Source: Thecamonas trahens ATCC 50062 | Taxonomy: Eukaryota; Protista; Apusomonadida | Length of the DNA: 64,000 nt | NCBI RefSeq assembly: GCF_000142905.1 | Contig: NW_013657656.1 | Coordinates: 117,369-181,368, forward strand | Direction: 5' to 3' | Shown here: positions 98-2,419 of the stretch, piece by piece | Layout: each line of letters begins with the position of its first letter | How positions within the stretch are numbered: position 1 is the first letter of the stretch | Made by a program: the position numbers and the translations under genes | The notes under the pieces: generated by a model | Told to the model about the DNA's origin: nothing | Database searches by the model: none | The model's input: the letters and a program-made list of their open reading frames with translations, nothing else

Positions 98-2419
98 ATG
101 ACTCTGCACTACATCTCGCTCTTTGTCGAGTACAACGTGCAGACGCCGTTCTTCCGCAAGGCGCTCGCGTGTTGGGAAGACTATCGCAGCCGGAGTTTCG
201 CGGCCGGGCTCGCTCGGCGGGAGTTTGTGGACGAGGTGGTGGCCCGGCTGGCGGCGCCGGTGCCGATGGACAAGGTTGTGCTCACGCTTGTGGAGCAGGC
301 GTCGTCGGTGCAGTGTGCGCTCGGGCTCGGCGAGGCCGGGACCATGCCGAACGATCCCGAAAAGAGCGCGGAGACGCTGGCCAAGTCGCTGACGTCGATT
401 GCGCTCGAGGGTCTGCTCAAGGCGTCGTACGAGGTGCCGGAGCTGCACGACAACCTGCTGCTCTTCCTCAAGCACCCAGGCATCACCGAGGGTCGGCTGC
501 TCTCGCTGCTGTACATGATCCGCCTGTTTGTGGCGACGCCGACGTCGAACCCGCTGCCGACGCCAACCATCATGTCGCTCATCACCACGGTCAAGCAGTT
601 CTACCTCTGGCCGCTTCCGTACGCGTCGGTGGCCAAGACGCTTCTCCGCGAGCTTTCGCGCGAGCTGCGTGTTCCCGGCTCGATGTGGCGCGACGCGTAT
701 CTGCGGTCGAACGCGTCGCTGCTCGAGGCCGACGCGCGAGGCGCCGCCGACGAGGCCGACGCCCGCGAGGGTCTCGCGCACGTCTTTCTCAACATTTCCG
801 AGCCCAATCTTCCGCACTTTAGCTACCTCATGCATCAGTTTGCCACCGAGCGGCCGACGCCGACCCAGATCAAGTACCACTTTGTAGTCACAACCCTCAA
901 CCTGCTCCTCGACGATGGCGTCGACGCCGAGGCGCTCGGTCTCTCGACCTGCGCCGCGAGCGACATCGACGCGCTCTACACCCAGCTGACCGCGCTTCTG
1001 GCCAAGGCCGAGGCGCTCAACGACGTCGCCGAGTCCAAGAAGCTCTACACCGCCGGCGTCACTGCCATTCGCGACTCGATCACCATGCTTCCACCGGCTT
1101 CCACGCCGGGAACCCAGACCGCGGTGGCCTCACCGTCGGCGCTGCGGTACAACTTTCTGGTCCTCGGCGATGAGTACGACGACAACGTGTCTGCGAGTGC
1201 GGTGACTGTCGACGACGAGCTTCACATCCCGGTCACCTCGGGCTACGGCATGCTCCGCGACGTGCTCGCGCTGTATGCCGATGCCCAGGCTGGCGTGGTC
1301 GACACCGTTGCGCCCGAGGATGACGACGACCCCGACGGGCTCGACGGCGACGGCGACGGCGAGTCGTCAGGCTCGCGCCCGCAAGGCAAGCGCATCGTCA
1401 AGATCGGCGTTGGCGGCTCCGATTATACCCTCCTCAACGTTGTTGCTGGCTACGTGGCGTTGCTGCGGACCGAGCCCGAGCTCGTGGACAAGCTTCAGGT
1501 TCAGATCTACGTGCTTCCGTTCGGGACCGAGAACGCGCTTGCCTCATTCCTCGGCTGCTTCGACGGGTGGTACGGGCGGCACATGCTCGACCTCTCACAG
1601 ATGGTGGCGCGGGTGATGCCACACGTCGGTGCGCCGCCGGCGCCCGTCCTCGACGTCTTTGACGCCGGCGGCACGCTCGACGTCTCCATGTTTGAGGGTG
1701 GCGTCCGCCCGGACATGGCCCCGAACCGGCTCCCAGTTCCGCAGCTCTCACCCGGCGAGCTCCTCTGCCACGAGATCGAGCGGTACTTTACCCGCGGCAT
1801 CCACCCACTCGACGTCAACATTTACTTGTGCGAGATCTGGGTGGCGTCGGCGACGCGCGGCGGCGAGCCCATCCATCGCACCATTCCGTTTGTGCAGCGA
1901 GTGGAGATCGGCGTCAATGCCGCCGCCCGCTCGTTCCGCCGCAAGAAGGGCTGGTCGCACCTCTCGCTCGACGACGTCGTCACCCACAAGTCGTTCAAGT
2001 ACACCGGGCCTGAGCTCACCGCCTCGTTCTCCGAGGTGTCGCTCTCGGGTCTCGCTCGACCCGGCCCGCCTATCCCCACCAAGCAGTACTGGAACGTGAC
2101 AGTCTCCAACGTGCCTGCGCCCGGCCAGAGCGGCACTCCGCCGCGGCCCTCGCACTCGGCGCTCGAGCTCTACTGCCTCGACTTTGACACCGGCAAGCGG
2201 CTGCAAAAGGGCAAGTCCGCCGTCATGGATGGCGAGCGGACGTACCACGCCTCGCTCATCGAGCTCCAGGCCAAGGACACCAAGAAGCAGTTCCCTATCG
2301 TCATCGATGGCCAGCTCTTTGAACCCGTCGACAAGATCCGCATTTCTCCGTGCTTCAAGGGCGCGTCCAACACCCAGGCTGCCCTCTCGGTCATGACTTA
2401 CTTTCCGCTCGACCTCTGA
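98..2419 (+). CDS. PI3K-gamma (class IB) regulatory subunit p101/p87 (PIK3R5/PIK3R6)-like protein; may have an upstream exon (possible 3' splice site CAG at ~72-74 after a poly-C tract)
   Basis: Collinear blocks resembling p101 as recalled: FYLWPLPY..RELRVPG; LQVQIYVLP; NALASFLGCFDGWYGRH; RYFTRGIHPLDVNIYLCEI; FVQRVEIGVNAAARS; VSLSGLAR; IRISPCFK; LSVMTY at the C-terminus. Confidence 0.75.
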   Translation: MTLHYISLFVEYNVQTPFFRKALACWEDYRSRSFAAGLARREFVDEVVARLAAPVPMDKVVLTLVEQASSVQCALGLGEAGTMPNDPEKSAETLAKSLTSIALEGLLKASYEVPELHDNLLLFLKHPGITEGRLLSLLYMIRLFVATPTSNPLPTPTIMSLITTVKQFYLWPLPYASVAKTLLRELSRELRVPGSMWRDAYLRSNASLLEADARGAADEADAREGLAHVFLNISEPNLPHFSYLMHQFATERPTPTQIKYHFVVTTLNLLLDDGVDAEALGLSTCAASDIDALYTQLTALLAKAEALNDVAESKKLYTAGVTAIRDSITMLPPASTPGTQTAVASPSALRYNFLVLGDEYDDNVSASAVTVDDELHIPVTSGYGMLRDVLALYADAQAGVVDTVAPEDDDDPDGLDGDGDGESSGSRPQGKRIVKIGVGGSDYTLLNVVAGYVALLRTEPELVDKLQVQIYVLPFGTENALASFLGCFDGWYGRHMLDLSQMVARVMPHVGAPPAPVLDVFDAGGTLDVSMFEGGVRPDMAPNRLPVPQLSPGELLCHEIERYFTRGIHPLDVNIYLCEIWVASATRGGEPIHRTIPFVQRVEIGVNAAARSFRRKKGWSHLSLDDVVTHKSFKYTGPELTASFSEVSLSGLARPGPPIPTKQYWNVTVSNVPAPGQSGTPPRPSHSALELYCLDFDTGKRLQKGKSAVMDGERTYHASLIELQAKDTKKQFPIVIDGQLFEPVDKIRISPCFKGASNTQAALSVMTYFPLDL

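What the first reader, a model, noticed from the sequence alone, without database searches (positions are those of the whole stretch)
98..2419. Apparent full-length p101/p87 (PI3K-gamma adaptor) homologue in a unicellular eukaryote
Seen: at least eight motif blocks in the same order as human PIK3R5 as I recall it. Examples: WPLPY..ELRVPG vs WPVPY..ELKAPG; NALASFLGCFDGWY vs NDISHYLGMLDPWY; VEIGVNAAAR vs LELGHSAATR; ISPCFK vs VSPCYK; terminal LSVMTY vs LPIMTF. Established: p101/p87 couple G-beta-gamma to class IB PI3K and are generally described as vertebrate proteins. Inference: the adaptor, and possibly GPCR-to-PI3K coupling, predates animals.
Basis: partly seen in the sequence, partly recalled or inferred. 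Interest (0 to 1): 0.8.

Follow-up and report, generated by a model that had tools for sequence, protein, structure and literature searches.

The report
Ancient p101/p84-type PI3K adaptor homologue
This gene of the free-living flagellate Thecamonas trahens encodes a genuine relative of the p101/p84 adaptors of mammalian PI3K-gamma, and its relatives occur across most eukaryotic supergroups, so a protein family described as vertebrate-only is in fact very old, although this organism lacks the G-beta-gamma that the mammalian adaptor senses.

Summary

A full-library search found 295 relatives. Named ones come from Capsaspora, dictyostelids, Balamuthia, Rigifila, Diphylleia, Rhodelphis, Palpitomonas and a jakobid, and the gene tree broadly follows the species groups. 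The family therefore predates animals by a wide margin, whereas the literature places its origin in vertebrates.

Three corrections:
1. The ORF is not the whole gene. About 95 family-conserved N-terminal residues are missing, probably in the ~1 kb run of N just upstream.
2. The NCBI model AMSG_11887 fuses an upstream Rab to this gene. That Rab has its own -GCC stop, so the fusion is probably an artefact.
3. T. trahens has at least two class I PI3Ks but no detectable G-alpha or G-gamma, and a published survey reports no heterotrimeric G proteins. G-beta-gamma coupling cannot be its role here.

PI3K binding remains inferred. The scan had not noted this family on other DNA.

The parts
1..73 (+). 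C-rich tract (about 40 nt) followed by ...CTCATCATCGCAG. Probably the 3' end of an intron with its acceptor AG. It lies directly after a run of about 1041 N.
   Evidence: The sequence was read directly. The NCBI model P0001 uses this acceptor...AGDS|GRTLESVTM. That it is an intron is inferred. The frame is also open through this stretch.
74..2419 (+). Main, last coding exon of the p101/p84-like gene, stop codon included. The first ATG is at 98, and the true start codon probably lies upstream in the gap.
   Evidence: ORF listing. The family profile match begins at window nt 80, at profile position 79 of 799. Most relatives carry about 95 more N-terminal residues.
98..259 (+). aa 1-54: helical N-terminal extension with no counterpart in vertebrate p101 or p84.
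   Evidence: The structural alignments to p84 and p101 begin at model residues 54-59. pLDDT is about 83-85.
260..1087 (+). aa 55-330: helical solenoid (ENTH/VHS-like), equivalent to the p101 N-terminal part of the p110-binding domain.
608..679 (+). aa 171-194, WPLPYASVAKTLLRELSRELRVPG: the best-conserved motif of the whole family (WPxP[YF]...E[LI]KxPG). It is the turn and second helix of the helix pair that I count as p101 alpha5-alpha6.
   Evidence: Alignment to p101. Conservation in 56 family members. PMC8397274 names alpha5, alpha6 and the turn between them as the primary p110-gamma interface. The helix count is my inference.
758..2416 (+). aa 221-773: two-lobed diacylglycerol/sphingosine-kinase-like module (alpha/beta lobe plus beta-sandwich), with a helical insert at aa 238-330.
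1415..1429 (+). aa 440-444, GSDYT: degenerate form of the kinase nucleotide-binding motif GGDGT. The Gly after the Asp is replaced by Tyr.
   Evidence: Alignment columns. p101 has GSDRI at the same place. Intact GGDGT is seen in P0002, Rigifila P0007 and Stygiella P0069.
1517..1573 (+). aa 474-492, PFGTENALASFLGCFDGWY: family motif P.G..N.LA.FL...D.WY. It resembles the PxGTGNdxA motif of DAG/sphingosine kinases and aligns with p101 NDISHYLGMLDPWY.
   Evidence: P474, D489 and Y492 are nearly invariant. The resemblance to the kinase motif rests on my own knowledge.
1826..2368 (+). aa ~577-757: beta-sandwich equivalent to the p101 C-terminal (G-beta-gamma-binding) domain, boundaries approximate. 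It includes the EIG..AAR motif and a basic loop, RRKKGW (aa 614-619), at the place of the p101 KRL loop.
   Evidence: Profile alignment to p101 601-876. Strands in the model. The p101 711-KRL-713 loop is described in bioRxiv 10.1101/2023.05.04.539492.
2384..2416 (+). aa 763-773, LSVMTYFPLDL: C-terminal strand that returns to the alpha/beta lobe. It aligns with p101 LPIMTF.

Best explanation
The ORF encodes a true, distant member of the p101/p84 (PIK3R5/PIK3R6) family. It has an ENTH/VHS-like helical solenoid joined to a catalytically degenerate diacylglycerol/sphingosine-kinase-like module (alpha/beta lobe plus beta-sandwich). Its most likely role is as a non-catalytic regulatory subunit of one of the class I PI3Ks of Thecamonas trahens. 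In that role it would contact the C2 domain and flanking linkers of the kinase through the conserved WPxPY...ELKxPG helix-turn-helix, and use the beta-sandwich face to help place the kinase on the membrane. This organism has no heterotrimeric G proteins, so any upstream input cannot be G-beta-gamma. The family itself is inherited vertically from an early eukaryotic ancestor. Homology, fold, architecture, distribution, presence of class I PI3Ks and absence of G-alpha are shown here. PI3K binding, membrane placement and lack of catalysis are inferred.
For: Sequence and fold:
- Pfam PI3K_1B_p101 scores 29.5 bits against a cut-off of 23.
- phmmer to solved p101 gives E 7.5e-5.
- The profile of 56 relatives against PDB gives p101 E 1.8e-32 and p84 E 3.4e-26, collinear over nearly the whole chain. 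The next hit, acylglycerol kinase, has E 0.4.
- The AlphaFold2 model has pLDDT 85.5 and pTM 0.89.
- Foldseek gives p84 E 1e-20 and p101 E 1e-15 to 1e-19.
- The language-model neighbours are PIK3R6/p101 clusters.

Conservation and catalytic motif:
- The most conserved family motif lies on the element that forms the primary p110-gamma interface in PMC8397274.
- GGDGT is degenerate (GSDYT), as in p101 (GSDRI).

Genome context:
- The gene is single copy in the genome.
- Two complete class I PI3K genes (RBD-C2-PIK-kinase) match p110 at E about 1e-160.

Distribution:
- There are 295 relatives with E <= 1e-3, and 47 of 56 hit PF10486. Capsaspora hits best, at 74.8 bits.
- The gene tree recovers Amoebozoa, CRuMs and Thecamonas+Capsaspora.
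Against: - No direct evidence of binding to a PI3K was obtained.
- The partner that defines the mammalian function is missing here. No G-alpha exceeds the cut-off and no G-gamma was found, and the published survey agrees.
- Identity to p101/p84 is only 14-20%.
- The p110-gamma-specific features used by p101 (the anionic C2 surface and the ABD-held linker) were not examined in the Thecamonas kinases.
- A weak sub-threshold Pacs-1 match (15.1 bits against 25) shows that the kinase-like module is shared with another adaptor family that has a different job.
- The 5' end of the gene is unresolved.
Confidence: 0.6

Rival explanations
1. It is a p101/p84-fold protein that does not work with PI3K. It would be a pseudo-lipid-kinase scaffold with another role, for example a membrane-traffic or sorting adaptor in the manner of PACS proteins, and the PI3K partnership would be a later, animal-lineage co-option.
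For: - There is a weak Pacs-1 match in this protein (E 0.012), and 16 of 56 relatives match Pacs-1 (best 8.7e-9).
- The protist family carries an N-terminal extension of about 150 residues that is absent from p101 and p84.
- The organism keeps the gene although G-beta-gamma is gone.
Against: - The Pacs-1 score is below its cut-off, while the p101 score is above its own.
- The whole architecture, including the N-terminal solenoid and the interface motif, is shared with p101/p84 and not with PACS.
- Class I PI3Ks are present.
- Among the names recovered, I saw no fungi or green plants. These are the lineages that PMC4617754 reports to have lost class I/II PI3Ks. Only about 14 of 150 hits could be named, so this point is weak.
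Confidence: 0.25
2. It is an active lipid kinase of the diacylglycerol/sphingosine kinase superfamily, not an adaptor.
For: - Remnants of kinase motifs survive: GSDYT, PFGTEN..A and DGQ.
- Some relatives keep canonical GGDGT and DGE and hit Pfam DAGK_cat.
Against: - In this protein the Gly after the Asp of GGDGT is Tyr. From my own knowledge, mutating that Gly is the classical kinase-dead change in sphingosine kinase 1.
- DGE is DGQ.
- The first strand shows no phosphate-binding NPxxG-type loop.
- This protein has no DAGK_cat hit.
- p101, the closest solved relative, is reported to lack the catalytic residues.
Confidence: 0.05
3. The NCBI model AMSG_11887 is correct, and the protein is a Rab GTPase fused N-terminally to the p101-like module.
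For: - The annotated 980-aa protein P0001 joins a Ras-family domain (aa 10-171, E 3.5e-50) to this ORF.
- Both lie on the same strand about 1.1 kb apart.
- An acceptor-like site precedes the ORF.
Against: - The Rab frame runs 10 codons past the proposed donor to ...GGRPQKSGCC-stop, a normal Rab prenylation tail.
- The proposed intron consists almost wholly of a run of about 1041 N.
- None of 55 full-length relatives carries a Ras domain.
- The relatives instead have a conserved N-terminal segment of about 95 aa that the fused model lacks.
Confidence: 0.07

Closest known systems
p84/p87 (PIK3R6) and p101 (PIK3R5), regulatory subunits of class IB PI3K-gamma (PDB 8aj8_B, 7mez_B, 8so9_B)
   Same: - Same three-part architecture in the same order: helical solenoid, alpha/beta lobe, beta-sandwich, and a C-terminal strand returning to the alpha/beta lobe.
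- Shared motifs: WPxPY...ELKxPG, N..S.[FY]LG..D.WY, E[IL]G..AA.R, [IV]SPC[FY]K and MT[FY].
- Degenerate GGDGT motif.
   Different: - Only 14-20% identity.
- An extra N-terminal extension: 54 residues present, and about 95 more expected from relatives.
- Much shorter disordered linkers than p101 311-512.
- The host genome lacks heterotrimeric G proteins.
- Partner binding is untested.
PACS-1/PACS-2 sorting adaptors (Pfam Pacs-1, PF10254)
   Same: Weak similarity confined to part of the kinase-like module (aa 429-606 against profile 72-209, E 0.012). 16 of 56 relatives match, the best at 8.7e-9. The language-model score is 0.86.
   Different: The score is below the Pfam cut-off (15.1 against 25). 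PACS has no counterpart of the p101-type N-terminal solenoid motif. No Pacs-1 match was found anywhere in this genome.
Diacylglycerol kinase / sphingosine kinase / YegS / NAD kinase superfamily
   Different: The key glycine and the DGE glutamate are replaced. There is no Pfam DAGK_cat hit for this protein. A large helical domain is added at the N-terminus and inserted after the first strand.

Membership tests
p101/p84 (PI3K_1B_p101, PF10486) | Match to the curated family profile above its gathering score | tested here: met
   29.5 bits against a cut-off of 23, E 2.3e-7, aa 158-330 on profile 98-262. 47 of 56 relatives also match.
p101/p84 (PI3K_1B_p101, PF10486) | Full collinear architecture of solved p101/p84: helical solenoid + alpha/beta lobe + beta-sandwich | tested here: met
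   [not shown]
p101/p84 (PI3K_1B_p101, PF10486) | Conserved alpha5-turn-alpha6 element that forms the primary interface with p110-gamma | tested here: met
   WPLPY...ELRVPG aligns with p101 WPVPY...ELKAPG and is the best-conserved block in 56 relatives. The assignment to alpha5/alpha6 is my helix count.
p101/p84 (PI3K_1B_p101, PF10486) | Forms a heterodimer with a class I PI3K catalytic subunit | not testable with these tools
   Candidate partners exist: two complete class I PI3K genes. Binding itself needs biochemistry or a paired-alignment complex model.
p101/p84 (PI3K_1B_p101, PF10486) | Confers G-beta-gamma sensitivity (G-beta-gamma binds the C-terminal domain loop) | tested here: not met
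   The partner is missing. The best G-alpha hit is 37 bits against a cut-off of 48.8, and all hits look Arf-like. No G-gamma was found, though that search had no positive control. PMC3971589 states that T. trahens lacks the heterotrimeric subunits. A basic loop (RRKKGW) sits at the p101 KRL position, but its function is untested.
p101/p84 (PI3K_1B_p101, PF10486) | Kinase-like module without catalytic residues | tested here: met
   GSDYT replaces GGDGT and DGQ replaces DGE. No DAGK_cat hit.
PACS (Pacs-1, PF10254) | Match to the family profile above its gathering score | tested here: not met
   15.1 bits against a cut-off of 25.
Diacylglycerol/sphingosine kinases (DAGK_cat, PF00781) | Intact GGDGT nucleotide-binding motif and profile match | tested here: not met
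   No DAGK_cat hit. The motif reads GSDYT. Only the fold is shared.

The most novel reading that the evidence does not exclude
A p101/p84-type subunit is the ancestral, near-LECA-age partner of class I PI3Ks, and is still present in Dictyostelium-type amoebae, Capsaspora, apusomonads, CRuMs, cryptists and jakobids. The belief that protist class I PI3Ks lack regulatory subunits would then be wrong. The core job of the subunit (stabilising the kinase and placing it on the membrane) would not depend on G-beta-gamma, as its retention in G-protein-less Thecamonas would show.
Probability: 0.4. Interest if true: 0.8.

Novelty: new member of a known kind. Interest (0 to 1): 0.62.

Why it matters
The only phylogenetic study of class IB regulatory subunits that I found places their origin in the vertebrate ancestor (PMC4617754). 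A review states that Dictyostelium has catalytic but not regulatory class I PI3K subunits (PMC6563779). The data here show a well-conserved, full-architecture p101/p84 family in at least seven deep eukaryotic lineages. Among them are genome assemblies that I believe, from memory of the accession numbers, to be dictyostelids.

If these proteins bind class I PI3Ks, then the question of how chemoattractant receptors switch on PI3K in amoebae can be tested by knocking out a single gene in a tractable model. Thecamonas would offer a natural case of the adaptor working without G-beta-gamma.

The family also documents how a lipid-kinase fold became a regulatory pseudoenzyme. Some protist members still carry the intact GGDGT and DGE motifs.

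Automatic pipelines already tag some of these proteins with PF10486 or as 'PI3K regulator'. What is new is therefore the interpretation and the breadth, not the bare domain hit.

Tried and rejected
- Word-indexed protein search, with the ORF and again with the 56-sequence alignment, returned only the protein itself. The candidates were probably swamped by low-complexity words. The second call was wasted.
- Complex prediction with ORF aa 60-773 and the RBD-C2-linker/C2/C2-helical-linker piece (aa 356-611) of the C51 class I PI3K gave no verdict (score 0.00). The tool did not use my alignment and the controls were not run. This is neither support nor evidence against binding. The other two PI3K candidates and the full-length kinase with its ABD could not be tried.
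- A second weak PF10486 hit at G000:C71:34486-34902 (E 0.016) was not recovered with the family profile. I treat it as noise.
- The G-gamma Pfam search found nothing but had no positive control. On its own it proves little.
The 56-sequence alignment was used instead.
- I could not obtain vertebrate p101/p84 or PACS sequences by reference. No tree containing them was built, so orthology as opposed to deeper paralogy is not formally tested.
The only spliced model used was the public one returned by a tool (P0001).
- The careful IQ-TREE run did not finish. The quick tree is reported.
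Full report
**What is there**

The window is G000:C24:117369-181368 of Thecamonas trahens ATCC 50062. On the + strand an open frame runs from the window edge to a stop at 2417-2419. Its first ATG is at 98, giving 773 aa. GC content is about 65%. A RAE1/Bub3-like WD40 gene converges on it from 3908 to 2685.

**Check of the observation**

- Pfam gives PI3K_1B_p101 at 29.5 bits (cut-off 23) for aa 158-330, and a sub-threshold Pacs-1 hit (15.1 against 25) for aa 429-606.
- phmmer against all PDB chains finds only p101 (7mez_B and 8so9_B, E 7.5e-5). 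Its alignments show WPLPY/WPVPY, ELRVPG/ELKAPG and NALASFLGCFDGWY/NDISHYLGMLDPWY.
- The other quoted pairs (VEIGVNAAAR/LELGHSAATR, ISPCFK/VSPCYK, LSVMTY/LPIMTF) appear in the family-profile alignment to p101.

**Relatives**

The word-indexed search found only the protein itself. The claim concerns distribution, so I ran the exhaustive phmmer search. It gave 295 proteins at E <= 1e-3, 165 at <= 1e-10 and 36 at <= 1e-30, mostly 800-950 aa long.

Look-ups named the following:
- Holozoa: Capsaspora owczarzaki CAOG_08646.
- Amoebozoa: Clastostelium, Soliformovum, Balamuthia (auto-named '1-phosphatidylinositol-3-kinase regulator') and Acytostelium.
- CRuMs: Rigifila and Diphylleia.
- Other lineages: Rhodelphis marinus, Palpitomonas bilix and the jakobid Stygiella incarcerata.

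Two further members sit in genome assemblies GCA_000203815.1 and GCA_000190715.1. From memory of the accession numbers I believe these are dictyostelids. They cluster with Acytostelium at full support.

Of 56 full-length members, 47 hit PF10486 (best 4.4e-21, Capsaspora, 74.8 bits), 16 hit Pacs-1 and 6 hit DAGK_cat.

A profile of these 56 sequences hits solved p101 at E 1.8e-32 in three collinear pieces (p101 85-264, 506-566, 601-876) and p84 at 3.4e-26. The next chain, acylglycerol kinase, is at E 0.4.

A quick IQ-TREE (LG+C20) recovers Amoebozoa (96), CRuMs (98) and Thecamonas+Capsaspora (90). A weakly supported split (76) separates these from Rhodelphis, Palpitomonas and Stygiella. FastTree agrees. 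This is the pattern of vertical descent, not of contamination or transfer.

**Structure**

AlphaFold2 with the 56-sequence alignment gave mean pLDDT 85.5 and pTM 0.89. The only low-confidence stretches are the linkers at aa ~395-431 and ~507-551.

| Match | Foldseek | VIA-align |
|---|---|---|

**Anatomy and mechanism**

The best-conserved block of the whole family is WPxP[YF]...E[LI]KxPG (aa 171-194 here). Structural alignment places p101 residue ~7-11 at model residue 55-59. Counting helices from that point, the block is the turn and second helix of the fifth/sixth helix pair (H155-170, H175-191). PMC8397274 states that alpha5, alpha6 and the intervening turn form the primary interface with the p110-gamma C2 domain and its linkers. 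The mapping is my inference. If it is right, the most constrained surface of the family is the kinase-binding one.

The kinase-like module keeps recognisable remnants of lipid-kinase motifs:
- GSDYT stands in place of GGDGT. p101 has GSDRI at this position, while Rigifila, Stygiella and P0002 still have GGDGT.
- PFGTENALA resembles PxGTGN..A.
- DGQ stands in place of DGE.

The bulky Tyr after the Asp argues that this protein is not catalytic (my own knowledge of sphingosine kinase mutants).

**Partners in the genome**

Three loci carry a PI3K Ras-binding domain. Two are complete single-ORF class I kinases with RBD, C2, PIK and kinase domains. They match p110 delta/gamma and p110 alpha at E about 1e-164 and 1e-161. 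The C51 gene aligns with p110-gamma from the RBD onward in one piece.

By contrast, the G-alpha profile finds only Arf-like fragments below the cut-off and G-gamma finds nothing. de Mendoza et al. 2014 report that T. trahens lacks the heterotrimeric subunits while keeping a few GPCRs. The G-beta-gamma coupling that defines mammalian p101 cannot operate here.

The family is single copy in this genome and no PACS gene is present.

**Gene structure**

The public model AMSG_11887 (P0001, 980 aa) prefixes a Ras-family domain. That domain lies at C24:115690-116292. Its frame continues past the proposed donor to GGRPQKSGCC-stop, an ordinary Rab tail. The 'intron' is almost entirely a run of about 1041 N that ends exactly at the window start. 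I cannot tell whether the N are an assembly gap or withheld sequence.

None of 55 relatives has a Ras domain. Most relatives have about 95 conserved residues upstream of the Thecamonas Met1. The family profile matches from profile position 79, starting six codons upstream of the ATG.

The window begins with a C-rich tract and CAG. The simplest reading is that a 5' exon lies in the N run, and that the annotation pipeline borrowed a cryptic donor in the neighbouring Rab gene. 'Full-length' is thus true relative to p101/p84 but not relative to the gene's own family.

**Comparison with what is known**

Philippon et al. 2015 conclude that class IB regulatory subunits arose in the vertebrate ancestor. 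Nakada-Tsukui et al. 2019 state that Dictyostelium has no class I regulatory subunits. Full-text searches found no paper describing non-vertebrate p101 relatives. The library is incomplete, so this is not proof of absence. Automatic annotation already attaches PF10486 to this and some related proteins.

**Limits**

- Binding to PI3K is not shown. The one complex prediction allowed gave no verdict and counts for nothing.
- I had no vertebrate p101/p84 or PACS sequences by reference, so orthology rests on three things: profile scores, a full-length fold match, and a gradient of Pfam scores that is highest in Capsaspora.
- No contig looked human.

**Verdict**

This is a real p101/p84-family gene in an apusomonad. 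It belongs to an old, widespread eukaryotic family and probably encodes a PI3K regulatory pseudokinase. It is not a G-beta-gamma sensor in this host.

Noticed in passing
L004:1503-2131 (G000:C24:115690-116320), just upstream of the window: A complete Rab-type GTPase gene (Ras family, E 3.5e-50) ends in ...GGRPQKSGCC-stop. The NCBI model AMSG_11887 splices it to the p101-like ORF across a run of about 1041 N, which looks like a gene-model fusion artefact.
   Followed up: yes
A1 alignment: P0002, P0007 (Rigifila), P0069 (Stygiella), P0049: Some protist members of the p101-like family keep the canonical lipid-kinase motifs GGDGT and DGE, and hit Pfam DAGK_cat (up to E 3e-6). They may still bind nucleotide or even be active kinases, unlike p101 and the Thecamonas protein.
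   Followed up: partly
L023:3001-6359 (GCA_000203815.1), L024:1414-4984 (GCA_000190715.1), P0032 (Acytostelium): Social-amoeba genomes encode p101-like proteins of 1000-1150 aa, although reviews state that Dictyostelium class I PI3Ks have no regulatory subunits. That the two accessions are dictyostelids is from my memory.
   Followed up: partly
window 2685-3908 (-): A convergent RAE1/Bub3-like WD40 gene (407-aa ORF) has an unusual His/Asp-rich N-terminal extension (HDHDHDHDRDHDR...) and a proline run.
   Followed up: no
L021:2458-5238 (-) (G000:C61): A third RBD-containing PI3K-like ORF (927 aa) has a PIK domain but only a short, sub-threshold kinase-domain match (23.9 bits against 27.1). It may be split by an intron, truncated or degenerate.
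   Followed up: no
[not shown]
   Followed up: no
A1 alignment, first ~95 consensus positions (absent from the window ORF): The protist family has a conserved N-terminal segment (including an FW motif) that vertebrate p101 and p84 lack altogether. Its function is unknown.
   Followed up: partly
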